64,000 bases of DNA, taken from Mytilus trossulus (taxonomy: Eukaryota). Both the position numbers and the translations under genes were made by a program. Shown here piece by piece: positions 716 to 48,326 of the stretch; the first letter of the stretch is position 1; the number at the start of each line of letters is the position of its first letter. Location: NCBI RefSeq assembly GCF_036588685.1, contig NC_086382.1, positions 21,576,001 through 21,640,000 on the forward strand. The letters run 5' to 3'. The notes below the pieces were generated by a model. It searched no databases. It was not told where the DNA came from and saw only the letters and a list, made by a program, of their open reading frames with translations.

Positions 716-1045
716 GAATACAAGGCGAACCAAACTGGATAGTTCAAGGAAAAGTGACAGGTTATGGGGACAACTTGACACTATTCTGTTCCGTTGATGA
801 CTGCTGCGTAAAACCAGCAGGATGGATTAAATTTGATCCTGATTATGAAACAATATATTTAGATGTAAGAGATTCTAGAAGTAGTGCTTCTACAAAAGAC
901 AAGTATTCTGCAACAACAAAAAGTACAGGATTTAGTTTAGTTATCAAAAGTCTGCAAATAAAGGATTTAAACATAGTTTATGCCTGTTTGTATGGTTTTG
1001 AAAGAAGCAGGGAAAAGCTACTACATCCTTCGGATGTTTTCAAAG
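716..1045 (+). CDS. Internal exon encoding a V-like immunoglobulin domain (Ig-TM-ankyrin gene, first exon in window)
   Basis: Acceptor tttatttctcag at 715 and donor AAG/gtaaat at 1046; 330 bp, phase 1-1 as is typical of Ig exons. Translation has LTLFC (B strand), AGWIK (C-strand Trp) and FSLVIKSL..KDL...YAC (E/F strands). Confidence 0.85.
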
Positions 1046-1586
1046 GTAAATTAGGTACAAGATGCAGTAAGGGCCTTAATCAGTATATTTGTTTGTTTTA
1101 TTTTTGATATTTTAGCACAAACATATAGTTGTTTTTTAACCTACAAATATGGAACTAAAAAATATATTCTTATGCTGAGGCGGCTAAACGCAAACACCGA
1201 TCAAAGATATCTTATGAAAATATAGTTTGGTACTTCATGTCCTAGCATATCATGTTCATAATAAAACAGTGAACTTGACTTTTAAAAATCGCCAAAACGG
1301 GTTTTTTTACTGACAAGGGACCTGAGGCAATATATAAACGTGACTTTGTGACCTAAGCGGAGCATAATATTAATAATATATAGTCTATAAGAATCTACCA
1401 ACCAGTAAACTTAATAGGTATTGGATCATCAAAATTGACAATACTACACAAACAGGAAAAATTATATGAGTCTAAAAGATTGTGTAACAATACCGATAAA
1501 TAGATGGAAAACAAAACACTAAAAAGTATTGAATATCATCGCACAAAGATGGAAAAACTGAACAGATGATGTAAATTATACAATAA

Positions 1587-1628
1587 TTGCAAATATTTCG
1601 GCTCAACAAATGGCCTTCTTCGGTGCAA
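1587..1628 (-). ncRNA. Minimal type I hammerhead ribozyme in PLE pLTR (variant core; mirrored copy at 2331-2372, + strand)
   Basis: UUGCA-CCGAAGA-AGGCCAUUUGUUGAGCC-GAAA-UAUU-UGCAA; the core is CCGAAGA instead of CUGANGA. Confidence 0.6.
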
Positions 1629-1764
1629 AAGTTTTAACAATACTGATATATAATGTATAAGGTGTAAACATAGATCAGTAATAATACAGGTAAGTTTTGG
1701 TCGATTGATTTTAATCCAAAATCCTGAATATAATAATATTAACACGTCTAAACTGTAAATTTAA

Positions 1765-2230
1765 TTATTTCTTTCTATTGATTCCGTCTGGATGGAGGAC
1801 ACCCAGTGTTTTTATACAAAACTTCTCCCGATTCTCTCTTTGCCTATTTTGCCATGTACAATCCTGTTCGATCACAAGGATCTTTATGTGATCAAAATCT
1901 TTCAGATTGTGATCTGGTAACCTGAAGTGTTGGCTGACCGGAATATACGGTTTTTTTGTGAGGTCACTCCTGTGGCCATTAAGGCGTTTGTGAAATGGCT
2001 GCATAGATTCACCAACATATTGGAGACCACATCTAGGACACTCAAGAACGTAAATCACGTTTGAGCTTTTGCAGTTGACATTGCAGAAGATCTTGTATGT
2101 TTTTCTGTAGTCTTACTGTGAAATGTTGATGAATGCTGCAATTGGTTGCAACTTTTGCAGCGCTTATCCCAACAAGGCTGGCAATTACCTACAGTGTGGT
2201 TAGGTTTGGAAAGGTCAGCACGGACAAGTA
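1765..2230 (-). pseudogene. PLE GIY-YIG endonuclease relic
   Basis: ORF 1765-2058 plus the frameshifted upstream Cys-rich linker. Confidence 0.85.
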
Positions 2231-3102
2231 TTGGTGAATTTGGATTAAAATCAATCGACCAAAACTTACCTGTATTATTACTGGTCTATGTTTACACCTT
2301 ATACATTATATATCAGTATTGTTAAAACTTTTGCACCGAAGAAGGCCATTTGTTGAGCCGAATTATTTGCAATTATTGAATAATTTATATCATCTGTTCA
2401 GTTTTTCCATCTTTGTGCGATGATATTCAACACTTTTTAGTGTTTTGTTTTCCATCTATTTATCGGTATTGTTACACAATCTTTTAGACTCATATATATA
2501 CTAAAGAAATATTGACACCGAATGTTTGTGGCACAACATCCTGTCCACAAGTTAACAATTTTTTTTTTCTGTGACGTATTAAATTTATAATAAGATCCAT
2601 TTTGTTACAACCTGTGATCAATTTTATTTGGCAATCGCCAATGGCAGTCAGCAGGGTTAAAGAACATCAGTTGTTCGACCTGTTAGTCAAATGCGTTTTG
2701 TTTAAATATACTTTTTCACTCTTTTTTGGTCTTTTGGAAAATGTTGTTTGTGCTGTTTTTAGACCCTTTTACAACGAAATTTGTTGGACATGCACACGTA
2801 TAAAAATTGTGGTTTTTATCCAACGCAGTCATAGGTTTGAACGTAGTTTTCAATTTAGACTCGTTTATATATATATATAAGTACGTCTGAGTCAGTGACA
2901 ACTCTACAACAGATTTATCCATCGGATCACCAGCAAAGATGGTGATACATGGCTGTGTACATAATGTATATACAACTCGTCTAAACAGCAACCCAACAAT
3001 GTTAGATCTGTAAATTTGCTTTCGCAAATTTTTTGTTCTTCCATCGCTGGGATTCGAACCAATTTACAGATCTAACATTGTTGGGTTGATGTTTAGACGA
3101 GT

Positions 3103-3136
<34 letters not shown>

Positions 3137-3274
3137 TACGTCTGAGTCAGTGACAACTCAACAACAGATTTATCCATCGGATCACCAGCAATGTGTACAT
3201 TATGTATATACAACTTAATCTGTAACAATAACATCTCCATGCCTTATATATCATGTACTGTAGTTCGCCGCTAG

Positions 3275-3327
3275 ATTAAAACTGACGAGGAAAGGTAAAT
3301 CACGGCCACCGAAAGCTTTATTTTAGT
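3275..3327 (+). ncRNA. Candidate minimal type I hammerhead ribozyme upstream of the tRNA-like head
   Basis: AUUAAAA-CUGACGA-GG..CC-GAAA-GCUU-UA-UUUUAGU, with palindromic AAAGCUUU; stem II is weak. Confidence 0.5.
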
Positions 3328-3330
3328 GAA

Positions 3331-3424
3331 GCCCAGGTGGTCGTGTGGTCTAGCGGGACGGCTACAGTGCCGGCGATTTGGTGTCACGATATCTCAGTAG
3401 CATGGGTTCGAATCCCGGCGAGGG
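3331..3424 (+). ncRNA. tRNA-derived Pol III promoter (SINE-like head), not a functional tRNA
   Basis: GCCCAGG TGGTCGTGTGGTCTAG (A box) ... GGTTCGAATCCC (B box); poor acceptor stem. Further copies at 43877-43971 (+) and ~45584-45678 (-). Confidence 0.7.
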
Positions 3425-3743
3425 AAGACAAAAAAAAAAAAAAATTGCGAAAGCAAATTTACAGATCTAACATTGTTGAGTTGTATATATATATATAAGT
3501 AAATATATAAACGAGTCAAAGTTGAAAACTACGTTCAAACCTATGATTGCGTTGGATAAAAACCGCAATCTTTTAACAACTGATGTTCTTTAACCCTGCT
3601 GACTGCCATTGGCGATTGCCAAATAAAATTGATCACAAGATGTAACAAAATGGATCTTAATATAAATTTAATACTTAACAGAAAACAATTAACTTGTGGC
3701 CACGATGTTATGCCACAAACATAAGGTGTTAATATTTTTTTGT

Positions 3744-7630: not shown

Positions 7631-7684
7631 ACACCATTAGATACTAGTACACCATATACGCTTCAAATATTTAAAGAACCTTTG

Positions 7685-7875: not shown

Positions 7876-7894
7876 TGCACATCGAAGACAAACT

Positions 7895-9190: not shown

Positions 9191-9865
9191 TAACACGTCA
9201 GGGAGACGTGACGTTACATAAAGCGCGGTAAATAGTAAACGTCGAGTGTGCGGTATTTACGATATACTTGGGGCCGCACAAAAGTGAAATTAACAAAAAA
9301 CATTGAATTTAACTATTAAGAAAATAAAATATCTAAAAACTTTAAGCATTTCTCAAATGAGTTAATGTCCATGGAACTAAATTGAATCTCGCTATTAACA
9401 CATTTAAAGTCTTTTTATAATTCACTTAGTCCATTTCTTTATCTTCTCCATGGCAACCATTTTGGCTTTGCGACATGTTTTAATTGAACAGTCTGTATTA
9501 TCATCATCGCTATTCAAACTAACTTCAAGTGGGTACAGTTTTGTGATTGGACGCGATGTTAGTCCATTTTTGGTCCGTATGACGGCAGATCTTGCTAGTC
9601 CGTCTTCTCCTACATTGAGTTTTTCGACAACGGCTAGTGTCCATTTGATCCTCGGCGAATCTTCATAGATTTGTACCACGTCTCCAATGGTGATCAGCTG
9701 TCCTGTATTGCGATGATATTCTCTTAGAGCTGTTAAATATTCGTGTTTCCATTTATACAAAAAATTTGAATAATCTGTGATTTCATCTTAAACAGTTTAT
9801 TCGAAGATTTATGTGTCATATCATTTAGTGAATGTTCCAATTCCTGATTCGTAGGGTAAGGTAGT

Positions 9866-10038
9866 TGTTCAGGACTGTGTTCATTAGACGTTCGCGGTAC
9901 CGCTATGTATGTATTGTAACGTCATGCGACTTATGACGTTGAGATTTATGGGCAAATGGAGTTTAGAATCAATACAAGTAGAAACAGCTAGTATTTCTTA
10001 TTTGTGCCTAACAAGTCTGATAATACCACTCTAAGATA
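9866..10038 (+). repeat. 5' LTR of the inner BEL element
   Basis: TGTTCAGG...CTAAGATA, followed by the PBS. Confidence 0.95.
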
Positions 10039-10057
10039 TTGGTGCCGTAGGACCAAG

Positions 10058-13000
10058 ATGAGTTCCAAACTACGTTCTATACGTGCAGGACACAGAAGCG
10101 TTATTTCCCGACTTTTGAAGAAATTTGACACATCCGAGACGACGGAGACGAGCCCGTGAAAACTGAAAGATCGTTTATGCTTTAACTGTCTAGGACACCA
10201 TAGCTTGTCCGCATGTAAATCTACAAAAACTTGCAACAAGTGTCACAAACGTCATCACACCAGCATTTGCAAAGACAATGTTAAAACAAATGAAGACAAC
10301 AAACCAACAGGGGATATAACCGTAGGCACAATTCAACACAACGCGGAGGAACCAGACACTGTTTTACACTCGCAATCGACAGATCGTGTACTTTTGAAGA
10401 CAGCAATTAACCCAGTAAGTTCAGAACATGAAATACTTGATGTAAAAATAGTGTTTGACGAAGGCGCACAGCGCTCATTTATCACAGAGGAATTAGCCGA
10501 AAAATTGAAACTCAAACCTACTGGAACTGAAAGCGTTAACCTATCCGGATTTGGAGACAATGCAAATAGTACTAAAATTCGCCATTTGAGTACAGGATTG
10601 GTATATCTCATAACGGCAGAGGTTAAACTTCCGATTCGAGTCTTGATCGTTCCAGAGATCGCAGTACCGATGAGAACCTATGTACACCAAGCAGCAAAAC
10701 TTACATATTTGTCAGGAATCAAATTAGCTCACCCAGTAACAGCAGATGAAAACTTTGAAATTTCTATTCTAATTGGAGCTGATTACTTCTGGTCAATTGT
10801 TCAGAATGATATTATCCGAGGCGAAGGACCGACAGTTGTTCAATAAAAAATCGGATACCTGTTGTCTGGAATGCTATATTCACACAACTCTGACACAGAT
10901 GGATACAAGAGAGCTTCAATGATGAACGTGATGATCGCAACAAAAACCGATGAGTACGACTTGGAGAAATTTTGGAAAATAGAGTCACTGGCTACCGAGA
11001 AAATTAACACTACAAAGTTAGAAGAACAGATGGATATTCAAAAGACTTATGAAGATAAACAAATTCGTTACCATGACAACAGATATTTTGTAACGTTACC
11101 ATGGAAAGAGGATCACCCTACGTTACCGACCAATAAAACCATTTCACAACTTAGGACGGAAAGTGTAGTAAGAAGACTTAGCAAAGAACCCAAACTTCTG
11201 GAAAAATATGGAGAAATAATGGCTGAGCAGGAGAAAAGGGGTTTCATAGAGAAAGTGGATACTACTAATGAGGCCGATGAAAAGAGCAAAATACACTATA
11301 TTCCGCATCATGCTGTGAGAAAAGATTCAACTACAACACCAATCAGGGTCGTATTCGACTGCAGTTGTAAAGCAACACCAGAATCGTCTAGTCTTAATGA
11401 TTGTTTGATGACTACTCCACCCAATTTAAATGACTTAGTCGGCATTCTTTTAAGATTTCGTTTACACCAATTTGCCGTTACTACTGATATAGAGAAGGCG
11501 TTCTTGAACGTTGGATTAGAGACACAGGATAGAGATGTCACACGTTTCTTTTGGTTCGATACACCAACAGACCCATCAACTCCACTATCAACTTACCGAT
11601 TTAAGTCTGTATTATTTGGAGCCACTTCATCGCCATTCATACTGAATTCCGTTCTATAAAAACACTTGAGAGAGAGCCGTTGTGAATATACTGACACTTT
11701 AAAGAACGATTTGTATGTTGATAATATACTGTCGAGTTTTCCTACAGAGAGTGCATTACTGAAATATTTTGATACTTCAAGAGACTTATTCATTAAAGCA
11801 GGATTTAACTTGCGCTCATGGGCTTCAAATTCTCAACTTTTGCGAGACCGCGCAAATTCACACAGCGTATTAGACAAAGATGAACTCATAAAAGTGCTTG
11901 GATTGAGATGGAACACTTGTAACGACACACTTACTTTCGCCAAACCGGAATACACCGATATTGAAGATACACGTATGACAAAACGAGATATTTTAAGACA
12001 ATCGTCTAAAATCTATGATCCACTCGGACTTATTGGTCCAGTTACTGTGCGTAGTAAGATGCTTATGCAGACTTTGTGGGAGAAAGGATTAAATTGGGAT
12101 GAACCTCTTACATCTGAAATTGCAACAGAATGGAAGTGTGTACTAAAAGATATTAATGAATGTTCACATTTGGAAATTAATAGACCGTATTTCAAAGAAA
12201 AATCAGACAATGTAGAATTACATGTGTTTACGGATGCAAGCTTGAAAGCCTATGGAGCATGCGCATATTTAGTCAGTGGAAAAGAAACCGTACTTATCAT
12301 GTCAAAGAAACGAGTGACACCACTGAAACAGTTAACAATTTCGAAGTTAGAACTCAGTGCAGCTTTGATAGGCGCAAGACTCGTCAAGCATTTGAAATCG
12401 CACTTGGATGTTACAAGCGTCACATTATGGAGTGACAGTCAGATAACTTTAAGTTGGCTCACTACTGAGAAACAATTACCCGTTTTCGTTTGTAATCGAG
12501 TGAAGGAAATTAACGAAATTACGCAAGAATACACATGGAAGTACTGTCCGACAGATTCAAATCCGGCAGATATGCTATCGAGAGGAGTAACTGCAACCAA
12601 ATTCCTAGAAATGGATCTTTGGATGAAAGGACCCGAATGGCTCACTGACAAATCAAACTGGCCACAGTGGAAGAATAAAGAATCACACATTCTTAGCACT
12701 ACCATTGAGCAAGGACAATCAACTAGTGAACCGCAACAGAAAATCAGATCTTATGAAGGAATAAGTAAAATTATGGATATACAACGCTACAGCTCATACC
12801 AAAAACTTTTGCGTATAACTGCATACATGTACCGATTCATAAACAACTGTAGAAATAATGACAAACTAACAGGAAATCTTAGTGTCAATGAAATTCAGAC
12901 TGCTTCGACTTCATGGATTCGAGATTCGCAACTGCGTAAATACCCGGATGTTATTGAGAGTTTAAACAATAAATCAGAGAAAAATGCGCTAGTGAAGCAA

Positions 13001-14359
13001 CTTGGATAGTACATGGATAAAATGAACATTATCCGTAGTGGCGGGAGAATTAACAATGCACCTATTGATGAATCAGCTAAATTTCCAGTACTAATACCGA
13101 ACAAAGACAGATTTTGTCAATTAATTGTGATGGATGCACACGCAAAGAATTTTCACTCTGGATTAGAAAGTACAGTGACATTTATTCGCCAGTCTTACTG
13201 GATTCCGTCGATTCGACAATGTGTGAAATCAATACTCCGTAATTGCGTTACTTGCCGTAAAATTACCGGAAGACCATATCATACACCCGACCCACCACCA
13301 CTGCCGTCCGACAGACTTAATGATTCACCAACGTTTACTGTAATCGGTGTCGACTTCACAGGAGTATTGAAAGTGAGAACAAAAAGCAACAGTATTAGTA
13401 AAGCATATATTTGTCTATTCACCTGCGCTAACACTAGAGCTGTGCATTTGGAAATCGTTGAAGACCTTACAGAACAAACATTCATTCTAGCGTGTAGGAG
13501 ATTCACCAGCCGCAAATCGTTACCAAAAATCATGATGTCTGACAATTGTACAACATATACCGCAGCAGCGAAGGAAATTGAAATGCTTACAAAATCTACT
13601 ACTATTCAGGAACAACTCAACATATATGGAACTCAGTGGAAATTTATTCCGAAGCGTGCACCATGGTATGGTGGTTGGTGGGAACGATTGATCGGCTTGA
13701 CCAAGAATTGCATAAAGAAAGTGTTAGGACGAGCACTAGTTACTTTTAGAGTGCTAGAGACAATTGTGATCGAGATAGAGGCTATATTAAATGATCGACC
13801 GTTAACCCTCGTATCAACGGACCTTACCGATGATGAACCGCTTACACCGTCTCATCTTCTCTATGGAAGACGGGTTAAAACTTTACCGTATTCAGGAACA
13901 ATTAATTTCAGCAGTGAGGAGAACGTACAAAACTTAACACATTACACATCAAATAGACAATCTAGTGTTCAAAAACGCATTATTCACGACTTTTGGAACA
14001 GATGGCGACGAGAATACCTCACTTCACTTAGGGAACAACATAGAAACACCGGAATTAACACTCAAATCAATAAAGTGGGCGACATTGTACAGATTCATGA
14101 TGATACCCCAAGGACAGTGTGGAATATAGCGATTATCGTTAAGTTAGTTTATGGGAGAGATGGACTTTGTAGGTCTGCTATTTTACGCACTAAAAATGGC
14201 ACGACGTCTAGACCAATAAGTAAGCTATATCCACTTGAACTCTTATCAACAGATAGTCCGTGTGATTCAAGTGACAACACTATTACTTCAACCAGAAAAG
14301 CAAAAACTGATGCCAAGAAGAAAATCAAAAGTTGGATTCAACCGTTCCGGAAAGCATAA
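10058..14359 (+). pseudogene. gag-pol polyprotein of the inner BEL element: one frame with four in-frame stops
   Basis: ATG at 10058 (MSSKLRSIRAGHR); stops at 10157, 10844, 11657 and 13007; all listed ORF pieces share one frame. Motifs VFDEGAQ, DIEKAF, YVDN, VFTDAS, GVDFTG and SDN. Confidence 0.92.
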
Positions 14360-14474
14360 AGACTGTTTAAGTGTAAACGGTTAAAGTTTTATTTCATTTG
14401 AGAGACAATAGTTATTTCATTTTAAAGTTTTTTCTTTATTTATTGCTTAAATTTTCATTCGCGGCCCCCCAGGA

Positions 14475-14647
14475 TGTTCAGGACTGTGTTCATTAGACGT
14501 TCGCGGTACCGCTATGTATGTATTGTAACGTCATGCGACTTATGACGTTGAGATTTATGGGCAAATGGAGTTTAGAATCAATACAAGTAGAAACAGCTAG
14601 TATTTCTTATTTGTGCCTAAAAAGTCTGATAATACCACTCTAAGATA
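14475..14647 (+). repeat. 3' LTR of the inner BEL element
   Basis: Direct repeat of 9866-10038, preceded by GCGGCCCCCCAGGA and followed by the TSD GTAGT. Confidence 0.95.
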
Positions 14648-17600
14648 GTAGTGATGTTATTCTACGTCCGTAAAGTAAGTGGGACGGGGTGAGCGGTTCA
14701 TCTAAGGGGTCGGATGATACGTACATGTATGTTAAAGGTCTGTCGTTGAGTATAGCTTCAACTTCCGTAACAATGGTTCTTAATAGTTCAATCTGAATCA
14801 ATGAACGCACTAATACCTTTTTGATAGAGTCCTTCGTTAGTCCTATAAGCCTCTCCCAAAAGCCACCATATTACGGTGCTCGTTTTGGTATAAACTTCCA
14901 AGTAGTGCCGAAGTTGTTCAGTTTTTCAATAACGGATGATGATCTTGTTAATTGCTTGGCGGCTGCAATGAATGTTGTACCGTTGTCTGAAATCATAATT
15001 TTTGGTAATGATTTTCTACTAGCAAATCTTCGAAACGCTAAATTAATAATATGAATGTCTCTTCAGATAAATTCATCACTACTTCTAAATGTACAGCACG
15101 AGTGTTTGCGCAAGTAAATAGACAAATGTATACTTTACTGGTAAGTCCATCTGTGGTTTTAACATTCAAGGCGCCAGTAAAATCTACCCCGGTTACTGTG
15201 AACGGGGGTGCTTCTGTTAGTCGGTCTTTAGGTAAAGGAGGTGGATCTAGAGCCGAATACGGTTGACAAGCAACTTTCTTGCAGATCACGCATTTATGTA
15301 TAATGCTCTTGATAACTTGTCGTATCGATGGTATCCAATAGGTTTGGGGTAGTAATGTTACGGTACTCGATAATCCTAAATGAAAATGAGTTACATGTGC
15401 GTCCATTATGATAAGTTGTGTCAATTTGTCCTTTGCGGGTAGCAATATCGGGAATTTTGTATATTCTTCAAGAGGTGCATTATGAATGCGTCTGTCGCAG
15501 CGAATTAATTTGTCTTTAGCTATGTATAATTTAAGTTGTTTGACAAGATTGTGTTTTTTCCCCTCTCCTGTTTACAAATCTTGAATGATTTCTGAATAAT
15601 GCTTTTTCTGTATGTATTGTATCCACGTTAAAGATGCGTTTTGTATTTCGATCGTGTTTAACATACCTGTTTGTATAGCTCGTGTTCTATAGTTTGTAAT
15701 AAATCTTCTCACGTAAGCGGTAATTCGAAGAAGTTTCTTGAATGAGTTGAATTTATTAAAATCGATGACATTTCCGATCCCTTGTATCATGTGTATAGTT
15801 AATTAGTTCTGTGTAGCTTGTACGGTATCTACTACGACTTCTTGGTGCGAAATAGTGGATAAAATTTGTGCTTCATCTCTGTTCCATTCTGGCCTATTAT
15901 CTTCAAGTGTGAGCCAATCTGGGCTATGCATCCAAAGTCAGTTGTCTTTGAATTTATCAACGGTTATCCCTCTTGACAGTAAGTCAGCAGGATTTGACTT
16001 ACTTGGACAGTATCGCCAGGTTAACTCTTCTGTTAGCTCTGTTATTTCCTTAACGTGGTTTGAAATGAACGGTTTTAAAGTTTTCTTTGAACTTAACCAG
16101 GTCAAAACTATCTGGCTATCACACCATAAAACTGCACGGGTTATCTGCAAAGTGTTCCTAATGTGTGGTAAAAGTCTGCTTCCAATTACGGCAGCCATCA
16201 ATTCTAATCTTGGTATTGTCAGTTGTTTCAGAGGTGCTACTCTGTTCTTTGCCATTATTAAAGAACTTTTTCCGTTTGCGACAATGTACGCGCATGCGCC
16301 GTAGGCTTTCAAACTAGAGTCTGTGAATACATGTATAACGTTGTCGTTGTTTGTGTCTGAACTTTCATCAAAGTAATGTCGGGGTACAACTGTCTTCGTG
16401 GCTTCTTGTATATACTTTCTGATATTCACCCATTCTGTGATCGTTGAGTCAGGTAGTAATTCGTCCCAGTTGAAGTTTTTCTCCCATATGTTTTGCATCA
16501 ACATTTTTTTGCGGACGGTTATAGGGCTTAGTATTCCTAGCGGGTCATAAATCCTTGATGATTGTCTTAGTACTTCGCGTTTTGTTATTAGTTCTGATGT
16601 ATGTATTAACTGTAACGAATCCTAATGTGTCACTGGCTATATCCCATCGTAATCCTAAGATTTTAACTAGTTGATCCTTGTCCATAACATTTACGGTTCT
16701 TGCTAATACTTGTAATAGTTGACTGTTGGAGGCCCATGAGCGCAAATTAAATCCTCCATCTGCAAATAGACTACGAACGAGTTTAAAGTATTTCAACAGT
16801 TCTTCTTCTGATTCAAAGCTTGATACAATGTTATCTACATATAAATCTTTGGTTAGTTTTTCAGTGAAATCAAATGGATGGTTATTCAAGTGCTTTGATA
16901 ATACGGCGTTCAATATAAATGGCGAGCATGTAGCACCAAATAGTACGGACTTGAAACTGTATGTTGTTAAATCGCTGTTTGGGTCTGTTGGTTTACTCAA
17001 CCAGAAAAACCTAGTTACGTCCCAGTCCTCAATGTCCAGTCCAACATTTAGAAACGCCTTTTCGATGTCTGTAGATACTGCATACTTATTCAAGCGGAAT
17101 CTGAGTAGTATGGCGGTTACTTCATTTAATTTAGGCGGTACATTCAGTAAGCAGTCATTCAAGCTAGCACTATCTGGTGTCTGTTTGCAACTACAATCAT
17201 ATACGATCCTAATTGGCGTCGTGACTGAATCCTTCTTTACTGGGTGATGTGGTAGGTAATGCAGCTTGATATTTTGTTTGATTTCTTCGTTATCAACTCT
17301 CTCAATGAACCCTCGCTTTTCCTGCTCATTAATTATTTCTACGTATTTTAAAAGTAATTTTGGTTCCTTTTGTAAACGTTTAAGTACACTCTCAGTCCTT
17401 CTGAAAGCAACAGCTTTGTTTGTTGGTAGCGGTGGATGTTTGGCTATATACCTGTTGTTATTGAAAGATATTGCTGTTTCTTCGTACATTTTCTGAAATT
17501 CGTCGTTTTCAGTATTTCCGGTAATCTTCAACTCCAAGCGATTCAATCTCCCAGAATTTCTCTAGGTTTAATTCCTCTGTCTTGTGTGATACGATAACAT

Positions 17601-20600
17601 TAAGAATAGAGATCCTACTTGTGGTACATGTACTTGCCGTTGTGGGTCCTGATAGGAGGTATCCAAGCCTGGATTCAACGGCGGTTGGTCCTTCACCTAT
17701 AATAATGTTATCTCCAACTATTCTCCAATAATAATCTGCTCCGATTAGTATTTCAATTTCGAACATGTCTTCGTCCGATACAGAATGTGCTAATTTTAGT
17801 CCTCGTAAGTGTCTCATGTTAGTAACGGATTTCATGTGAACTTGTAGTGGCATTGCAATTTCAGGAATAATTAGTACATTTAGTGGTATATTTTCGCCTT
17901 CATCTGTTTGAATATAAACTGTTGCCGATTTCATGTCTTACTTGTCTATTTTGTTCTCCGAAACCGGAAAGGTGCACTACTTCGTTTCCGCTTGAAACTA
18001 AATCCAACTTCTCTGCAAGTGTCTCCGTTATGAAGATCCTCTGCGCACCTTCATCTAACAAAATATTGGCTTCTGCACTTTGTTTTCTCGAACTAACAGT
18101 AGCGACGGCTGTCTTTAACAGTACATTTGTAGTTCTTTGTGTTAGGGAAGAATGTAATACCGTATTTTCGGTTTCTTTGGCTGGCGGTCTGCTCGATTCC
18201 TCAGATTTCTCATCTTTACTACATATGCTAGTGTGATGACGTTTGTTACAATTTCGACAGATACTTTTTGATTTACAATCAGCTAGTTTGTGGTGACCTA
18301 GGCAGTTGAAACACAGTCGTTCGCTCTTGACTATATTCATCCGCGCGTTAGCGGTTTTGACTTTAGTGCAGTTAACGGGTGTGTGTCCGATTTCGTGACA
18401 AAATGCGCATTGCTTTGTGTTTATCTTTTTATCCGAATACGACCTTTCGTTCTTGTTGAATGAAGATATTGTACGTGATTTTGCGTTGGTCAAGAATGTA
18501 GCGGTAGCGAGTGGGTTTTCTACTTTTTCCGGTAATTTGCCGGCTTCCATAATATTTAGTTCTTCGAGAAGGGCTTTGCGTAAATCATGTAGTGTCCAGT
18601 TTGTGGATCTGTGTTCTCGTGCTAAATGTTGACGTATCTCTGCGGGTAATTTATTTAGAATTACAGGGACTAGTAGTGATCCATACGTATCGTCTGTCTG
18701 TCCGAGTGACTCGAGACTTCTTACATAAGTTTCTGTCTTATCATAGTAGTTACGGAGACTAGTAATTGTATGATTTGGAGCCTGTAAATCAAGTAAGGCC
18801 TGCATGTAGGTTTGGACGATTTTATGAGTTTGCCCGTATCTTTCCTGGAGTAATGAAATTGCTTTGTCATAATTTGTGTTCGTCATGGAAAAACCTGCAA
18901 TATTTTGTAAAGCTTCGCTTTGTAGAAGGCACTTTAGGTAGTTGAATTTTTGTGCATCACTCAGTGAAGGATTTGTGTGGATCGCGGTTTCATAGGAGTC
19001 CCAAACCGAATGCCAGTCTAGTATATCTCCGGTAAATATAGGTAAGTTTAACTTTGGTAGCTTGTGATACTCGGTGTTTGCGCTAGACGATGAGCGTGAA
19101 CTTGAGCTATGCGTATATTGTTGGTTTGCAGATGTTGAAGGTTGACTAATAAATGTAGATGGAACTGATTGTGTAAAACTATCGGCATGAGGGTTCAAAT
19201 TGAATGAAATTGGTTCATTTGCGGGTAAACTCTAATTTTGAATTGACTTTGCCAATTTTGTAATTTGTCGTAATTTATATTCTAAATTGAACATGTACTC
19301 ATCTGATTCCTGTATTTCCACTGCTACATCTTCATCCGAAGTTTGCTCCAAGATCTTCTCGTTGATGTTCTCTAAAGTTCTTTTCTTCTGAGTGACTACT
19401 TCTAATAATTTTAAAATTTCCTCGTAATCCGCTTCGGAACTTTGTTGAATTTCTTCAAATTTCTTCAGGAGTTTCGTTACTGCACCTTTGTGTCCCGCTC
19501 GGACGGCTTTCATCTTCGTATCCATTTTCCCTTTTGTTTTAAGCTAAACATGCCACTGACGATCCGGCGTTATCCACATAGTAAGCTTTTTGCAACTGAC
19601 TTCGTAGGCTTGACAAAAATGAAGTTTGGCTTAAAATTTATACAAAACATATAGAATATATGTTCATGCTCTCTATATCTCTAATATTTACCAAATACGA
19701 ATGCAGCTGGTGTATACACCAGACATCCAACTATTATTTCTGTATCCGACATTCTGCTCAAATGCGATGCTCCATCTATTTTAAAATATTAACGTATGTG
19801 CAAGTGTCTGGTCTTTAACGCCACGAAAAGGGAATTTCTTAAATAAGGAAATAAACTGAAAAACGAGTCAAATGAGACTCACTTAAATTGTAAAACACGG
19901 TTTTTTCTGTGAAAGGGGTATTGAGTTTGAAAAGGCACGTGATATGCTCATAAAACAAGAAGGGTAATAAGACGTAGAGATACCTCTTTGGACAGCTTTC
20001 ACACTGCGAATCTGCAAATGCAATTTAAATATGTAAAATATTTATTGACAAATCATTAATAAAAATTGGATTGACTCTAATACCAAATTAGCGACAAGTG
20101 ACAACATACGCCATCCAACCATTTTTGTACATCTAAAAACCGTTGTTCGCATGCTTTGCATATATTTGATTACTAGTACATGTACTCTTGGGCTTTTGAC
20201 GGTCATTAAAAAATAATTGCCATGTAAATCATTAAGGCCGAAATCCCAAGTATCTTTATTGGTTTAAGAAACTGGTTTCTTGTTATTCACTATAAGAGCA
20301 CCTTCTTTTAAAACACAATCGCTATCCAACTAGGAATTTGAACTAAAATATTTAGCCGATTTTGACAATACCTAAACTGAAAAAACAGCTCTCCATTACA
20401 ATTGTTCTCCTTAGTCTTCTGTGTCTGGGTTAAACTCCGCAAAAAAGTATAGCCACCACATCAATGTTCTAATTCGCACGAGGTGCAACGCTGCATTGGG
20501 TCTATTACTACCAACATTTAGTCTTTTTCGCTTCGAAATTGTCGTCTTTCCTAAAGATACTGTAACTGAATATTCATTTCTCTATTTCTCTTTTGAGGCT

Positions 20601-26155: not shown

Positions 26156-26648
26156 AGAAGGTCTACATGTTTTTCAGAGATTTTAAACGAAATTAGACTC
26201 TGACCCCACCCCTCAGTTCAACAAAGAAATCACCACAAACCTGAAAACATACGTGAACAGGGACATATTGATGAAGACACATTTAAATATCTAAAACCTG
26301 AAAAATCAAAGCCCGGGCGTTTCTATCTTCTGCCCAAAATACATAAAGCCAATAATCCAGGTAGACCAATTGTTTCTGCCAATAACCACCCTACAGAGAA
26401 AATATCAGAATTTATTGTCTTTCATCTGAGACCACATGTAGAAAATTTACCATCCTATATACAAGACACAACACTCTATCTCAAGAAAATGGAATCTCTG
26501 AACCCTCTCCCACCTGAAACGATCATTGTCTCGCTTGATGTTTTCTCCCTCTATACTAACATCGTATTGAAGCCTGTAGGGAAGTCTGGAACTCTCGTAA
26601 CACCTTACATCCACCCACTGAATGTCTCATCCAGCTTCTAACTTTGGT

Positions 26649-27629
26649 CAATTAATCAACTTGATTATACAGACAAAACCCCTATTGAAAATATGCATCT
26701 TAAGTTTTGTAAATCTACTCTTGGAATAAGAAAAAATGCATCCAATTTAGGAGCAAGAGTTGAATTAGGGAGATTGCCTATAGAATGTTTATTAATACAC
26801 AAACCCTTTTATATTTAGCTAGACCTTATAATAATAATATTAATCCATTGATAAAGGAAGCTTTTTCTCTAGCACAGTCTCTAGATTTGGCAGGAACTTA
26901 TTATTCATGGTATACATATGCCAAAAATATTGTTGAAGAGACTAATGTTGACCTTAATATTCGTTCTACTTGTAAGGACATTAAAGATGTAAATGAAATA
27001 AAAAACGATATAAAGTTAAAAATGAAAAATAGATATGAAGATTTGCTTCAAACTAAATTTGAAAACATTGATGATAAAAGTAAATTTTATCTTTATAAAA
27101 AACTTAAAAAAGATTACAAACTAGACTCTTATCTTAATACATCTAATTTTCAGATAAGGAGATTAATCACTAAATTTAGAATAAGTGATCACTCCCTCTT
27201 GATTGAAAAGGGGAGATATTTTAAAATCCCAAGAGAGGAACGACTTTGCCATAAATGTAAAATACTAGAGGATGAGAAACATTTTTTACTCTATGGTGAT
27301 TATAATAAAACTCTAAGAAATGACTTTTTTTAACACATATGTACTGACAATAATAATTTTAATAATTTAACTAAAGAAGAAAAAAATCATTATTTACTAA
27401 ATTCATCAACACCTCTACAAACAAATAAGTTAGGATCCTTCTTGAAAAAGTCATTAGAACTGAGGGCAGGGGACTGTTAACAGCTTGTTTGTTGTTATAA
27501 ATTTTGATGCTGTTTTAATGGTGTATGCTTGATATGTATGTATATATGTTTATTGTGTTTATTGAGTTAATATATGTTCGTCACAAACTGTAAAGTTTAT
27601 ACGACAATAAAATATTTGATTTGATTTGA
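26649..27629 (+). mobile_element. 5'-truncated non-LTR retrotransposon (RTE-X-like C-terminus) inserted into the PLE RT
   Basis: KFRISDHSLLIEKGRY..REERLCHKC..EDEKHFLL; AATAAA and an (ATTTG)n tail; flanked by TTTGGT on both sides. The PLE frame [11 protein letters not shown] rejoins across it. Confidence 0.85.
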
Positions 27630-28387
27630 TTTGGTATTAAAATGCAATAACTTCACATTCAATGGTGAACAATTCCTCCAAGTTAATGGAACTGCAATGG
27701 GAACAAAGATGGCCCCGTCTTATGCCAATATTTTTATGGGGAAATTAGAACAGAGAATTCTCAATTCATCTCTTCATCAACCCCTCTCTTAGTTCCGATT
27801 TATCGACGATATTGACATAATGTGGGACAATACTGAACAAGAACTAAATTTGTACATTCATCATGCCATCGATGCCCATCCCTCAATAAAATTCACATAT
27901 GAAATCTCTGACTCTAAGATCACATTTCTTGACACTACAACGCAATTGAGGGATGGAAACATATTTACAGATCTGAATTGCAAGCCCACAGACAAACATC
28001 AATATCTATCTCATTTGAGTTGTCATCCTAAACACTGCACCAAGAGCATTCCCTACAGCCAGGCCATACGAATAAAAAGGATTTGCTCCACCACCGATAT
28101 TGCAAAAAAACGTCTACAAGAACTTCGCGGTCACCTTAAACATCGGGGCTACAAAAGAAAAGACATTGATAGAGGTGTTTCTCGTGCTTACAACATCAGC
28201 CCAGATGAGGTTTTACAATATAAAGACAAAAAGGTCAACAAGAGGGTGCTTTTTGTGATGACTTACCATCCAAAATTTAATAGCTTATCTCACCTTATCC
28301 GCGAAAATTGGAAAGAGATCGAAAAACGTCCTAAACTATCCAAGATCTTTCCCGAGCCACCTGTACTGGCTTTCCGTAGGCCCAAAA

Positions 28388-28721
28388 TAGTTATCAACGG
28401 TACCAGGATTATAATTTAGTACGCCAGACGCGCGTTTCGTCTACATAAGACTCATCAGTGACACTAATATCAAAATCTTTATAAAGCCAAACAAGTAAAA
28501 AGTTGAAGAGCATTGAGGATCCAAAATTCCAAAAAGTTGTGCCAAATACGGCTAAGGTAATCTATGCCTGGGATAAGAAAATCCTTAGTTTTTCAAAAAA
28601 AAATCAAAGTTTTGTAAACAGGAAATTTATAAAAATGACCACACTATTGATATTCATGTCAACACCGAAGTGTTGACTACAGGGCTGGTGATACCCTCGG
28701 GGACGAAACGTCCACCAGCAG
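28388..28721 (-). mobile_element. Retrozyme-like monomer inside the PLE
   Basis: Non-coding unit with an HHR at 28421-28464 and a structured module at 28658-28721; related to 7685, 38588 and the 42703 array. Confidence 0.8.
28421..28464 (-). ncRNA. Type I hammerhead ribozyme
   Basis: GUGUCA-CUGAUGA-GUCU UAUGU AGAC-GAAA-CGCGCG-UC-UGGCGU. Confidence 0.85.
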
Positions 28722-34906: not shown

Positions 34907-35003
34907 AGATTTTCAAAGATGAAGATGGAAAAACAAACGAACAAACAACCCTTAAATGGTCTAGTACAGAGACTAAAAAGAAACCTCAATTAGGAGGAAT
35001 AAT
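34907..35003 (+). CDS. Stalk exon of the Ig-TM-ankyrin gene
   Basis: Acceptor tatatttcag and donor AT/gtaagt; phase 1 in, phase 2 out. Reads EIFKDEDGKTNEQTTLKWSSTETKKKPQLGGI, in frame with the neighbouring exons. Confidence 0.7.
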
Positions 35004-39743: not shown

Positions 39744-39847
39744 TATGGCAGTGACATCAGCTGTGTTGATATGTATAGCGATTGGAGCAAACCTCGTTGT
39801 TATCTTGAAATCTCAACAAGAAAAGAGATTAGCTATGAGGAACAGAT
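39744..39847 (+). CDS. Transmembrane exon of the Ig-TM-ankyrin gene
   Basis: Acceptor ttatttgcag and donor AT/gtaagt; phase 2 in, phase 1 out. Reads (I)MAVTSAVLICIAIGANLVVILKSQQEKRLAMRNR: a hydrophobic helix followed by basic residues. Confidence 0.75.
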
Positions 39848-44658: not shown

Positions 44659-44702
44659 ACATCACTGAAGAGACATTTATTGTCGAAATCCGGATCTGAT
44701 GT
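44659..44702 (+). ncRNA. Type I hammerhead ribozyme (module A, perfect stems)
   Basis: ACAUCA-CUGAAGA-GACA UUUAU UGUC-GAAA-UCCGGA-UC-UGAUGU. Confidence 0.9.
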
Positions 44703-44965
44703 ACAAAAAAAATATATATATATATATTGACATCTTATGTTTGTGGCATAAAATCGTGGCCACAAGTTAATTGTTTTCAGTTTAGTATTAAATTTATATT
44801 AAGATCCATTTTGTTACATCTTGTGATCAATTTTATTTGGCAATCGCCAATGGCAGTCAGCAGGGTTGAATAACATCAGTTGTTCGACCTGTTAGTCAAA
44901 TGCGTTTTGTTTAAATATACTTTTTCACTTTTTTGGTCTTTTGGAAAATGTTGTGTGTGCTGTAT

Positions 44966-45502
44966 TTAGACCCTTCTACAACGAAATTTGTTTTACATGC
45001 ACTCGTATAAAAATTGCGTTTTTTATCCAACGCAATCATAGGTTTGAACGTAGTTTTCAATTTAGACTCGTTTATATATATATATAGTTTTAGACCCTTC
45101 TACAACGAAATTTGTTTTACATGCACACGTATAAAAATTGCGGTTTTTATCCAACGCAATCATAGGTTTGAACGTAGTTTTCAATTTAGACTCGTTTATA
45201 TATATATATAGTTTTAGACCCTTCTACAACGAAATTTGTTTTACATGCACACGTATAAAGATTGCGGTTTTTATCCAACGCAATCATAGGTTTGAACGTA
45301 GTTTTCAATTTAGACTCGTTTATATATATATATAGTCTTAGACCCTTCTACAACAAAATTTGTGTTACATGCACACGTATAAAAATTGCGGTTTTTATCC
45401 AACGCAATCATAGGTTTGAACGTAGTTTTCAATTTAGACTCGTTTATAAATATATATAGTTTTAGACCCTTCTACAACGAAATTTGTTCTAAATGCACAC
45501 GT
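44966..45502 (+). repeat. 124-bp tandem repeat (~4.3 units) of the module A 3' end
   Basis: Period 124 (ORF starts at 45014, 45138, 45262 and 45386); each unit ends in GACTCGTT(TA)n. Confidence 0.95.
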
Positions 45503-47022
45503 ATATATATATACAACTCGTCTAAACATCAACCCAACAATGTTAGATCTGTAAATTTGCTTTCGCTCTTTTGTTTTTGTTCTTCCCTCGCCGGGATTCG
45601 AACCCATGCTACTGAGATATCGAGACACCAAATCGCCTGCACTGCAGCCGTCCCGCTAGACCACACGACCACCTGGGCTTCACAATAATAAAGCTTCACA
45701 ACTCGTCTATATATATATGTACAACTAATGACAAAACAATGAGATTCAGTTATAAAAATATAAAAGTTTATACATAATTCATTCGTTTGTGAATGATTTT
45801 CATGGTACAAATACACCAATATACAAGTTGTCTTTTATTGCAAACACAATTTATACAACATACGATTTAAGTTTATAAATGCATTGCATAAGGAAATAAA
45901 TAAAGCACTATTATAAAATAACATTTGAGGAAATATATGTATAATGATGGAAAATACAATTATTGTTTATTCCACACCTACAATAGTTAAATTCATACTT
46001 CCTGACTGTATTAGCCCTTCAAATACACTTCAATTAGGAAGTATAATAGACCTAGCAACACAACTCCCAATAAAATCTGGGAGAGAGATTGAGTGCCTAA
46101 AAAGGATAAACAGTTCATCCTCTCCTACCTGTTGTATTGCGCCAGCAAGTAAAACATCATGCAATACGTCGCTTTCTATATAACTTTTATTTTATGAGAA
46201 TAAAGTATTCATGTAATTTCACAATTGAGAAAAAGAGGATGGGATTTAAGATAAGACAATTTTAAAATATATTTCTGTTTCCATATGTGGTACAGATGTC
46301 GGACAATTCAGGATGATATCCGTAAAACTTTCAAAGGGATAACTTTAACTTAATTAGTTGGTCTCTTTGGTGCAATAACGTCCTTATAAGTTGCCAGTAA
46401 CTCTCTATCAAGAAAATCATTATAGGACACTCAAACCCTGGATTAGCATCAATGCTGGAATGTTGCTACTCAGAAACTAAAAGTGCACAATTGGGAAATT
46501 GAAGTCATCTCTATGGCCAATAGGTTTAAATCCCAACTGACCCTCAGTGTCAATTCCTAAATGTATATCAAGATATAAGGCAGAATGAACTATAACTGTA
46601 ATGTCATAAATTTCATGGTTCAAGTGGATAGATGTAGTCAAAATAGTCACTATTTCAACATAGTCTCTATATTTTTATTTATTATGTAAAAAGACATCGC
46701 TAAACAAAAAGTGAAGTTAAAGGATAAAGCCATGGTTTTGCAATACATTTAGCGTGTGCTTGAAAAGTTTCTGTTTAAGAAAAAAGAAAAGTTGTCAAAC
46801 AGAGGTCGCATGCCAACATACGTGCTGTGCCATGTGAAAAATATGACTCAGCTTGTTGAATTATATTGGCTACAATCTAATAAATAGTTATGCAAAGAAA
46901 AAATACATACCTTTGAAAAAATATTAACATTTATAAGTAAAGGATGATAACTTAAAAAGAATAACGTATACACAATCTCTGAGCTTTGTTATTGCCTGTA
47001 ACCACTATATAAAATATTTCAG

Positions 47023-48326
47023 GTAATAACCAATTTGAACTAACAGCCATGGATGAGTGTGAGCAAGGATTACTTCAAGATGACTTATTTGATCAGTATA
47101 TAAAAGAAATAAAAAAATTACAAGATGATGAGGACAAAACTAAATACTGTGCACTTTTTCTTTTAATTGTGTATAATGGATGTTTAAGCAAGAAAGTGTT
47201 AACATCAGATGGTGCATCTAGAAGGGGAGATATACTTAAAGAATTTGGCATATTTGACACAAGTATACTTTACATATTTGAACAGTTGAAAGCTCATGTT
47301 TATTTTTTTGTGAAAGCAACTAGATACATTACCACTAAGTTAAATACATATGATGAATTTGTCCCAATAGATGACAAAATGTTTGATTTTGTCTGTTTTT
47401 ATTATGGTAAGCATAACCAAAGAACATTTATTAAGTTTTCACATACTAAGATATTGAATGGACGAACACAGTTTGTCTCACTACAAGAAAAGTCTGACGG
47501 ATTAACAGTCATGATAACGCGTAATAATGAAAATGCTTATTTCAATAGAATTGTTAATGACTTGTTGAAGGGATGTGTCACTGAAGTAGTTTACAACCAG
47601 CAAATGAAGTTCCCGACATACAGATCAGCTTTGATTAACTTTATGGAAAATCTTGACGCCCACACAAAATTAAAAGTAGTAAATGCTGCTAGCACTGAGA
47701 GTGGTTCGACTTTCTTCATGTATGCATATTGCGAGAGTTATGATGACATAACACAATTTTTAATTAAGGAAAATGCAGATACTGATATAGCAAATTTTGA
47801 GGGACAAAGTACGATGAGAATTGCATGTTACGATAAGCAGCTAGAAACTGTTGATATCTTTTTAAAGAATGGGGCAAATCCCAATGCTTGCTTTGATGAT
47901 GGATGGACCCTTCTTACTGAATCCTGTTACGCTGGTAATTTAGAGATAGTTAAATTGTTGATAAATGCAGGTGCAGAAGTCAATCATGTCAATGGAAATG
48001 GAGATACTCCTGTAACGTCATGTGTTGTTTTGGGGCATTTCGAAGTTATGAAGCTGCTGACTGACAATGGAGCTACATTGAATACCTCTAACAAGTTCGG
48101 CGTTAATTCATTGACCTCAGCATGTTTCTATGGACATATCAAACTAGTTAGATTTCTTATATCTAAGAATGTCGATATAAATGAAGCAGACGCAAATTCC
48201 TGGACACCGTTGATGTATGCTTCCTTATTTAATCATAATAATATTATGAACCTACTGTTAGCAAATGGAGCAAACAACAATGCATTTGATAAAAATCAAT
48301 GGACATCACTTATGAAAAAAATCTAA
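47023..48326 (+). CDS. Terminal exon: helical domain plus ankyrin repeats (cytoplasmic part of the Ig-TM-ankyrin protein)
   Basis: Acceptor aatatttcag at 47022, phase 1, in frame with the 425-aa ORF. Six 33-aa ankyrin repeats (e.g. DGWTLLTESCYAGNLEIVKLLINAGAEVN, NSWTPLMYASLFNHNNIMNLLLANGANNN) and a truncated seventh. Confidence 0.85.

What the first reader, a model, noticed from the sequence alone, without database searches (positions are those of the whole stretch)
716..48326. Hidden four-exon gene for an Ig-TM-ankyrin single-pass receptor
The ORF track shows only an Ig fragment and an ankyrin ORF 46 kb apart. Two small exons (34907-35003, 39744-39847) with canonical splice sites link them with matching phases (1, 2, 1), giving ~611 aa plus an upstream leader: V-like Ig domain with an unusual vicinal CC (SVDDCCVK), polar stalk, TM helix, basic stop-transfer, ~210-aa helical domain and 6-7 ankyrin repeats. 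An extracellular Ig domain coupled directly to a cytoplasmic ankyrin array is an uncommon architecture. A lineage-specific immune or recognition receptor role is inference.
Basis: partly seen in the sequence, partly recalled or inferred. Interest (0 to 1): 0.8.

Follow-up and report, generated by a model that had tools for sequence, protein, structure and literature searches.

The report
Mussel Ig receptor gene lacking ATPase
This is very probably a real, transcribed four-exon mussel gene for a membrane protein with an antibody-like outer domain and an ankyrin-repeat tail, but it is one truncated copy (its ATPase switch is missing) of a large mussel receptor family rather than a one-off design.

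Summary
The four exons exist as described: AG/GT sites, open frames and chaining phases (1, 2, 1). Exon 1 folds as a V-set Ig domain (pLDDT 91). It belongs to a family of at least 59 exons in this genome, all with the same borders and a near-invariant vicinal CC. Exon 3 is a TM exon related to the TM segments of family members. Exon 4 holds about 6.5 ankyrin repeats.

The "210-aa helical domain" is the post-NTPase region of mussel nSTAND3-ankyrin proteins. The Walker A/B NTPase half (about 215 codons) is absent from the window. Intact paralogues (P0033, P0058, locus C5:3.33 Mb) are leader-Ig-stalk-TM-nSTAND3-ANK with the same exon order and intron phases.

An RNA-seq contig starts matching exactly at 47023 and carries 302 more letters upstream. 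Introns show no coverage. So exon 4 is expressed and spliced at the predicted acceptor. What it is spliced to was not shown.

No leader exon was found in 20.7 kb upstream. Junctions 1/2, 2/3 and 3/4 were not seen directly.

Verdict: a new variant (NTPase-less, Ig ectodomain) of the membrane-anchored STAND-ankyrin receptor theme. This scan already noted that theme elsewhere in this genome (s1-829936, TNFR-like ectodomain). It may be a decoy or regulator, or a decaying copy.

The parts
716..1045 (+). Exon 1: V-set-like Ig ectodomain with a vicinal CC and one N-x-T sequon. Enters and leaves in phase 1.
   Evidence: Open frame and splice sites. At least 59 paralogous exons with the same borders. 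AF2 pLDDT 91 and Foldseek V-domain matches with TM 0.6-0.72. No Pfam Ig hit. omega 0.22-0.30 against the closest paralogues.
34907..35003 (+). Exon 2: polar Thr/Lys/Glu stalk, phase 1 to 2, ends AT|gtaagt.
   Evidence: Sites and frame. Its donor is the only strict-rule 1->2 donor in 38.7 kb; acceptors 34835 and 34862 are also possible. Same phase and same AT|gtaagt end as the stalk exon of the intact paralogue C5:3.33 Mb. Sequence similarity to homologues is not significant.
39744..39847 (+). Exon 3: transmembrane helix plus basic juxtamembrane stretch, phase 2 to 1.
   Evidence: Sites and frame. Hydropathy 2.56. Local alignment to the TM segments of P0008 and P0010 has z 7.4-8.4, with 0 of 300 shuffles reaching the score. 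It is the only strict 2->1 candidate. TM exons of the same phase follow both closest Ig paralogues.
47023..47720 (+). Exon 4, first part: post-NTPase helical region of an nSTAND3 STAND module. The first ~20 residues have no clear homology. The P-loop half is absent.
   Evidence: P0003 and P0004 (PF20720 carriers) and the paralogue C10:21.92 Mb align from residue ~20 on. No NTPase remnant in the window. AF2 model is of low confidence, with helices and one hairpin.
47721..48326 (+). Exon 4, second part: six ankyrin repeats plus a partial seventh, then the stop codon.
   Evidence: Pfam Ank families, E 1e-34 to 1e-20. PDB ankyrin and DARPin hits.
48327..50170 (+). 3' untranslated region of the last exon (approximate end).
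   Evidence: RNA-run contigs cover 47023 to about 50170, with none in 45737-47022 apart from one repeat.

Best explanation
The window holds a real multi-exon gene of a mussel-specific family of single-pass surface proteins.

Family design: members have a short leader, one V-set-like Ig ectodomain with a conserved vicinal cysteine pair, a polar stalk and one TM helix. The cytoplasmic part varies: short tails, BIR, Death, caspase, trypsin-like, or nSTAND3 NTPase + helical region + ankyrin array.

This copy belongs to the nSTAND3-ankyrin branch. Its large terminal exon lacks the ~215 codons of the P-loop NTPase (Walker A/B) and starts in the post-NTPase helical region. The product would be Ig-stalk-TM-helical-6.5 ANK.

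Shown: the exons, their phases, the Ig fold, the family relations, the missing NTPase, and transcription with use of the 47023 acceptor.

Inferred: that the partner of that acceptor is exon 3; that a leader exists further upstream; and how the protein acts. Without a nucleotide switch it cannot work as a STAND/NLR-like oligomerising ATPase. Most likely it acts as a membrane-tethered ankyrin scaffold, either a decoy or a regulator of its intact paralogues. It would compete for the same outer ligand through the Ig domain, or the same inner partner through the ankyrins.

Origin (inferred): duplication of a whole Ig-TM-nSTAND3-ANK gene within the C10 cluster, then loss of the NTPase-coding part. 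dS is similar for the Ig exon and exon 4 against their closest C10 paralogues.
For: - Splice sites, frames and phases.
- Uniqueness of exons 2 and 3 under strict splice rules.
- An Ig exon family of at least 59 copies with conserved borders and CC.
- Ig fold.
- Exon 3 is homologous to the TM segments of P0008 and P0010.
- Public proteins P0033 and P0058 are leader-Ig-TM-nSTAND3-(helical)-ANK.
- In this genome the locus C5:3327001-3347000 has Ig | stalk (1->2) | TM (2->1) | big exon (phase 1), the window's own pattern.
- TM exons of phase 2->1 follow both closest Ig paralogues.
- Exon 4 aligns to the post-NTPase part of PF20720 proteins.
- RNA contig X1 record 2 (615 nt) matches from 47023 on, starting at its letter 303. 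Depth is zero in the unique intron sequence upstream. A second run shows the same edge.
- dS is 0.64-0.66 for exon 4 and 0.79 for the Ig exon against the nearest C10 paralogues, with omega 0.2-0.5.
Against: - No read or contig was seen joining 1045/34907, 35003/39744 or 39847/47023. The 302 upstream letters of the RNA contig were not displayed.
- No leader or signal-peptide exon lies in the 20.7 kb upstream, and exons 1 and 2 contain no Met.
- No near-identical Ig-containing protein or transcript is in the protein collection.
- The only close relative of exon 4 there (P0001, 95%) starts at the internal Met of exon 4.
- Exon 2 has no significant homology.
- The exon 4 acceptor has a weak pyrimidine tract.
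- Three runs carry an extra A after 48271 that cuts off the last 17 residues.
- A rough count of differences between the window and the RNA-run allele suggests relaxed constraint: about 21 amino-acid changes among about 30 base changes. This is my estimate, not a computed dN/dS.
Confidence: 0.62

Rival explanations
1. The gene model is right, but the gene is a transcribed relic. It is a duplicate that lost its NTPase and perhaps its leader exon, is drifting, and makes no working receptor.
For: The NTPase half is absent. No leader lies in 20.7 kb upstream. A frameshift allele truncating the last repeat is present in three runs. The ratio of amino-acid to base differences between alleles is high (rough estimate). 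Several other short-frame copies of the helical region exist in the genome. No near-identical Ig-bearing protein is in the databases.
Against: All four exons keep open frames in an AT-rich, stop-rich genome. The Ig hallmark residues are intact. omega against paralogues is 0.2-0.5. The gene is transcribed and correctly spliced at exon 4, with a long 3' UTR, in runs from several studies.
Confidence: 0.25
2. There are two units. Exon 4 belongs to a transcript whose upstream exons are not exons 1-3 or are untranslated, and it is translated from the ATG at 47049 into a 425-aa cytosolic helical-ankyrin protein. The Ig-stalk-TM exons form a separate, short-tailed or dead gene.
For: P0001 (95% identical) is recorded as starting at this Met. 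Many family members are Ig-TM with short tails (P0005, P0008, P0010, P0141). The 3/4 junction was not seen. The leader is missing.
Against: No alternative terminal exon for the Ig-TM part was found by homology or by strict splice rules between 39848 and 47022. RNA runs cover nothing unique in 45737-47022. Exon 3 ends in phase 1 and exon 4 opens in phase 1, as in intact paralogues. The frame upstream of the Met stays open exactly to the acceptor. P0001 is most simply an ORF call on unspliced DNA.
Confidence: 0.1
3. Chance. The small exons are accidental open frames with splice-like ends between two unrelated genes.
For: With loose rules, 1130 AG..GT open stretches of the right phase exist in intron 1.
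Against: Exon 3 is significantly similar to family TM segments. Under strict rules the two exons are the only candidates. The phase pattern equals that of intact paralogues.
Confidence: 0.03

Closest known systems
Predicted Mytilus proteins P0033 (1184 aa) and P0058: leader, CC-Ig domain, TM, nSTAND3 NTPase, helical region, ankyrin array
   Same: Same Ig exon family (about 43% identity). Same order of parts. The own-genome counterpart (C5:3.33 Mb) has the same four-exon layout and intron phases.
   Different: They keep the Walker A/B NTPase domain and have many more ankyrin repeats. The window's copy starts its last exon after the NTPase. They are database predictions without any study.
Mytilus nSTAND3-ankyrin proteins P0003 (M. 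coruscus, named 'Novel STAND NTPase 3 domain-containing protein') and P0004; own-genome paralogue at C10:21921581-21923500
   Same: 55-61% identity over the helical region and ankyrin repeats, 71.6% at the DNA level.
   Different: Their open frame holds about 215 more N-terminal codons with the P-loop. Whether they have upstream Ig and TM exons is not known; an Ig paralogue lies 97 kb upstream of the C10 copy.
Receptor-like lineage-specific expansion in Crassostrea: Cys-rich ectodomain, TM, DED, TRADD-N and variable tails including STAND NTPases (Kaur, Iyer, Burroughs, Aravind 2021, PMC8195603)
   Same: A bivalve-specific family with a constant outer domain, one TM helix and shuffled apoptosis or immunity modules inside, STAND NTPases among them.
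   Different: The ectodomain differs (Cys-rich, not Ig). It has a DED/TRADD-N core. It is from a different genus. There is no homology of the constant part.
TNFR-like ectodomain + TM + nSTAND3 + ankyrin gene noted by this scan in the same genome (s1-829936)
   Same: A membrane-anchored STAND-ankyrin receptor in the same genome.
   Different: A different ectodomain, and the NTPase is present. I did not examine that locus.
NLR / STAND immune receptors in general, and truncated NLR genes that lack the nucleotide-binding domain (from general knowledge)
   Same: A sensor-repeat array C-terminal to a STAND module. Truncated copies are common in expanded receptor families and some act as regulators.
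   Different: Classical NLRs are cytosolic, use NACHT or NB-ARC rather than nSTAND3, and use LRRs rather than ankyrins. No function has been tested here.

Membership tests
Immunoglobulin superfamily, V-set-like domain | Two-sheet beta-sandwich fold like antibody variable domains | tested here: met
   AF2 with 64 sequences gave pLDDT 91.1 and pTM 0.85, with seven strands. The best Foldseek PDB hits are all antibody V or nanobody domains, probability 1.0, TM 0.6-0.72.
Immunoglobulin superfamily, V-set-like domain | Cys in strand B, Trp in strand C, and D-x-x-x-Y-x-C in strand F | tested here: met
   C24, W36, D83 and C90 are invariant and Y88 is at least 90% conserved in the 64-sequence alignment.
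Immunoglobulin superfamily, V-set-like domain | Match to a curated Ig profile (Pfam V-set, I-set, ig) | tested here: not met
   No Pfam family at E <= 1 for exon 1. The family is too diverged for the profiles.
Mussel CC-Ig single-pass receptor family (unnamed; defined here) | Ig exon homologous to the family, with the vicinal CC and phase 1/1 borders | tested here: met
   59 matches in this genome, 135 database representatives, conserved borders.
Mussel CC-Ig single-pass receptor family (unnamed; defined here) | Stalk exon (1->2) and TM exon (2->1) after the Ig exon | tested here: met
   Window phases. The same phases occur in C5:3.33 Mb and in both C10 paralogues. TM similarity has z 7-8.
Mussel CC-Ig single-pass receptor family (unnamed; defined here) | Short leader exon with a signal peptide | tested here: inconclusive
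   No candidate in the 20.7 kb upstream on the + strand. It may lie further away, since introns here reach 34 kb.
nSTAND3 STAND NTPase (PF20720) | P-loop NTPase domain with Walker A and Walker B | tested here: not met
   No PF20720 hit in exon 4. tblastn with the N-terminal halves of P0002, P0003, P0004 and P0033 finds nothing in the window. The alignment shows the window starting after this part.
nSTAND3 STAND NTPase (PF20720) | Family-specific region between the NTPase and the repeats | tested here: met
   Residues ~20-225 of exon 4 align to P0003, P0004 and at least 150 own-genome copies, with 23 invariant columns.
Ankyrin repeat proteins | Tandem 33-residue ankyrin repeats | tested here: met
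   Ank_2 E 1e-34, Ank E 1.3e-30, five separate stretches. PDB ankyrin and DARPin hits down to E 3e-83.
Single spliced transcript of exons 1-4 | Reads or contigs spanning each junction | tested here: inconclusive
   Only the acceptor side of the last junction was seen (contig edge at 47023 with 302 unplaced letters).

The most novel reading that the evidence does not exclude
Mussels have a surface receptor system in which one diversified V-like Ig ectodomain (the CC-Ig domain) is wired through a single TM helix directly to interchangeable cell-death and immunity modules: BIR, Death, caspase, trypsin-like, and the nSTAND3 switch with ankyrins. The window's gene would be a naturally NTPase-deleted member kept as a decoy or dominant-negative regulator of its intact Ig-TM-STAND paralogues.
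Probability: 0.2. Interest if true: 0.7.

Novelty: new variant of a known kind. Interest (0 to 1): 0.45.

Why it matters
STAND/NLR-type switches are normally cytosolic sensors. A family that anchors them in the membrane behind an extracellular Ig domain would link outside recognition directly to an intracellular oligomerising switch. Here that family has at least dozens of loci in one mussel genome.

The same Ig module is also found in front of BIR, Death and caspase domains. This points to a mussel-specific receptor toolkit built by exon shuffling, comparable to the oyster expansion described in silico by Kaur et al. 2021. None of it has been tested.

The window's copy is of narrower interest. 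It shows how such genes decay or are re-used: an in-frame loss of the ATPase with splicing and expression kept. It could serve as a natural "switchless" control for functional work on the family.

Tried and rejected
- A word search with the first 150 residues of exon 4, aimed at short transcript-derived proteins spanning the junction, found nothing.
- A word search with the Ig exon found no near-identical protein; the best was 73%.
- A metagenome scan with a 28-mer of exon 4 found nothing.
- Leader exon search: DNA comparison with paralogue upstream regions showed no shared block. An ATG + hydrophobic core + phase-1 donor scan of 20.7 kb gave only one weak 10-codon candidate, at -2054 relative to the window. 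The hydrophobic 'N-termini' of P0006, P0007, P0012 and P0140 look like translations of the pyrimidine tract before the acceptor, not signal peptides.
- NTPase remnant in the introns: none, even at E 20.
- Is the acceptor at 47022 the ancestral big-exon acceptor, with an internal deletion behind it? The first 16 residues faintly resemble the start of the paralogues' big exon (Q-x-E...E-[WC]-E-Q). The DNA alignment is no better than shuffles. Left open.
- AF2 of the helical region with 13 sequences gave pLDDT 58, too low for a fold search, which was not run.
- Exon 2 homology to stalks of family members is not significant.
- Literature: nothing on this Ig family or on mussel nSTAND3 receptors.
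- The joined four-exon protein was never built, searched or folded. All searches were done exon by exon.
Full report
**Setting.** The window is G000:C10:21576001-21640000 of a 1.3-Gb, 34% G+C genome. Its closest database proteins are from Mytilus coruscus, M. galloprovincialis and M. edulis.

**Observation.** The four stretches 716-1045, 34907-35003, 39744-39847 and 47023-48326 each follow an AG, and the first three end before GTAA(A/G)T. Each has one open frame.
- The phases chain. Exon 1 enters with two bases of a split codon and leaves one base. Exon 2 leaves two. Exon 3 leaves one. Exon 4 runs to a stop at 48324-48326.
- The split codons read E, I and C. The sum is about 610 codons.
- I applied strict rules: YAG acceptor, at least 10 of 15 pyrimidines, GTRAG[TA] donor. 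The exon 2 donor is then the only phase 1->2 candidate in the 38.7 kb after exon 1, with three possible acceptors (34835, 34862, 34907). Exon 3 is the only phase 2->1 candidate before exon 4.
- With loose rules there are 1130 candidates, so phase fit alone proves little.

**Exon 1.** Pfam sees nothing, but the exon is one of at least 59 homologous exons in this genome. All have the same phase-1 borders (borders checked in the 12 best). An exhaustive protein search gives 135 representatives.
- In a 64-sequence alignment C24, W36, D83 and C90 are invariant. The vicinal C29-C30 pair is at least 90% conserved.
- AlphaFold2 gives pLDDT 91. Foldseek returns only antibody variable and nanobody domains, TM 0.6-0.72.
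- So the 'V-like Ig domain with a vicinal CC' is right, and the CC is a family mark rather than an oddity of this copy.

**What the Ig exon is attached to elsewhere.** Full-length relatives are leader-Ig-polar stalk-TM followed by different tails.
- P0005, P0008, P0010 and P0141 have short tails.
- P0028 has a caspase domain. P0031 and P0055 have Death domains. P0046 carries the trypsin-like domain by its sequence; one search tallied one such member without naming it.
- P0033 and P0058 have an nSTAND3 NTPase; P0033 continues with a long ankyrin array (P0058 ends before the repeats).
- Among 27 longer members, 5 carry BIR, 2 Death, 2 nSTAND3, 2 ankyrin, 1 caspase and 1 Trypsin_2.
- P0044, an apparent 'Ig-ankyrin' protein, reads the TM exon in a wrong frame and is probably a mis-spliced model.

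**Exons 2 and 3.** Exon 3 has a 19-residue hydropathy maximum of 2.56 followed by K/R-rich sequence. It aligns to the TM and juxtamembrane segments of P0008 and P0010 with z 7.4-8.4, and 0 of 300 shuffles reach the score. Exon 2 is polar like the family stalks but has no significant similarity. Neither has a detectable paralogue in a six-frame search of the genome, which is expected for 31-34 residues.

**Gene structure of intact paralogues.** In C5:3327001-3347000, the counterpart of P0058 (94% in the Ig exon), the order is:
- the Ig exon;
- a stalk exon that enters in phase 1 and ends AT|gtaagt;
- a TM exon that takes one base and leaves one;
- a large exon that enters in phase 1 and encodes NTPase, helical region and ankyrins.

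This is the window's pattern, down to the AT|gtaagt end of the stalk exon. All the strongest own-genome matches to P0033 start at its residue about 193-206, the start of that large exon, and several lie 13-50 kb downstream of an Ig exon on the same strand. Both closest Ig paralogues on C10 are followed by phase 2->1 TM exons, at C10:21841774-21841871 and C10:21673678-21673772.

**Exon 4.** Residues 232-433 are six ankyrin repeats and a partial seventh. Residues about 20-225 are not a new domain.
- They align to P0003 (M. coruscus, 'Novel STAND NTPase 3 domain-containing protein'), to P0004, and to at least 150 own-genome copies. The aligned part lies between the P-loop domain and the repeats.
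- The closest paralogue, C10:21921581-21923500 (639-codon open frame), is 71.6% identical in DNA from 47087 to 48277.
- Its first ~215 codons, with Walker A (GxxGxGKS) and Walker B (hhhhDD), have no counterpart anywhere in the window, even at E 20.
- The window's copy is therefore an NTPase-less truncation.
- It is open whether the ancestral acceptor was kept with an internal deletion behind it, or whether a fragment was captured. The first 16 residues faintly resemble the start of the paralogues' big exon, but the DNA alignment is no better than shuffles.
- An AF2 model of this region is of low confidence (pLDDT 58) and shows helices with one hairpin. I did not search with it.

**RNA.** One search for runs was allowed. 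I gave it exon 4 and obtained one RNA run (X1) and three probable ones. One laying of at most 6 kb was allowed, and the 3/4 junction spans 7.3 kb.
- All four runs have zero depth on unique intron sequence in 45737-47022.
- Coverage runs from 47023 to about 50170.
- Contig 2 of X1 (615 nt, 97% identical) matches from exactly 47023, starting at its letter 303. Its first 302 letters lie nowhere in the stretch.
- The depth figure for X2 shows the same edge.
- Exon 4 is thus transcribed, carries a 1.85-kb 3' UTR, and is spliced at the predicted acceptor to at least 302 nt of upstream exon sequence.
- Under the model those letters would be exon 3, exon 2 and 101 nt of exon 1. The tool did not print them, so the partner remains inferred.

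**Weak points.**
- No leader exon was found in 20.7 kb upstream.
- Exons 1 and 2 have no Met.
- The protein collection holds no near-identical Ig-bearing relative.
- The only close relative of exon 4 (P0001, 95%) starts at the internal Met, most simply as an ORF call on unspliced DNA.
- Three runs carry an extra A after 48271, giving P0001's shortened end. The window's own frame matches the paralogue P0002 to the end.
- Against paralogues, omega is 0.22-0.30 for the Ig exon and 0.40-0.48 for exon 4, with dS 0.64-0.89.
- Between the window and the RNA-run allele, about 21 amino-acid changes among about 30 base changes suggest relaxed constraint. This is my rough estimate.

**Interpretation.** The most likely reading (about 0.6) is a genuine four-exon-plus-leader gene of the CC-Ig receptor family whose nSTAND3-ankyrin tail has lost its ATPase. 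Without the P-loop it cannot act as a nucleotide-driven switch. It could be a decoy or regulator, or be on its way to decay (rival, about 0.25). Two separate units (about 0.1) or chance (about 0.03) are less likely.

**Comparison with what is known.** Kaur et al. 2021 (PMC8195603) described in silico an oyster expansion with a constant Cys-rich ectodomain, a TM helix and variable apoptosis or immunity tails that include STAND NTPases. This scan has noted a TNFR-like-TM-nSTAND3-ankyrin gene and many HEPN- or CARD-nSTAND3-ankyrin genes in this same genome (not checked by me). I found no paper on the Ig-fronted family.

Noticed in passing
window 48271: Contigs of three runs (X1-X3) have an extra A after 48271. 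This shifts the frame and ends the protein 17 residues early (the same end as database protein P0001). The window's frame matches paralogue P0002 to the end. It is either an allele or a homopolymer error in one source.
   Followed up: partly
window 48895-49862: In two runs (X1, X2) a contig goes from 49862 back to 48895. This suggests a tandem duplication of about 968 bp in the 3' UTR of that haplotype, or an assembly loop. Depth also dips at 48681-48864.
   Followed up: no
window 9422-19525: Intron 1 holds two BEL/Pao-type LTR retrotransposon copies in opposite orientation, which explains much of the 34-kb intron. The + copy (about 10205-14359) has RT, Peptidase_A17 (E 3e-50) and integrase. 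The - copy (about 15038-19525) has DUF1759 gag-like (E 4e-37) and RT.
   Followed up: partly
window 24131-28419: There are further reverse-transcriptase fragments (25161-25838, minus strand, RVT_1 E 7e-5) and neighbouring ORFs without a Pfam match. ORFs at 1765-2058 and 24131-24565 resemble each other and look like the endonuclease end of a Penelope-like element; that is not tested.
   Followed up: no
window 45001-45736 and 46289-46472: A short repeat with a period of about 124 bp (the same 47-codon frame at 45066, 45190, 45314 and 45438) and a second repeat both have contig depth in the hundreds to thousands in all four runs. They are highly expressed or very abundant elements inside intron 3.
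   Followed up: no
G000:C10:21670183-21673772 (L015) and C10:21824927-21841871 (L018, L020): There are two paralogous Ig exons (60% and 70% identity), each followed by a phase 2->1 TM exon. A broken inverted Ig copy with three stops lies at C10:21672938-21673132. Together with the full nSTAND3-ankyrin frame at C10:21921581 this looks like a local gene cluster.
   Followed up: partly
database protein P0044 (556 aa): This public 'Ig-ankyrin' prediction contains the TM exon translated in a wrong frame (compare the TM exon of C5:3.33 Mb) and skips the stalk exon. It is probably a mis-spliced gene model.
   Followed up: partly
database proteins P0006, P0007, P0012, P0140: Their hydrophobic N-termini match the translation of the pyrimidine tract and AG just upstream of the Ig exon. 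The annotated start codons probably lie in the intron, and the true leader exons are missing from these models.
   Followed up: partly
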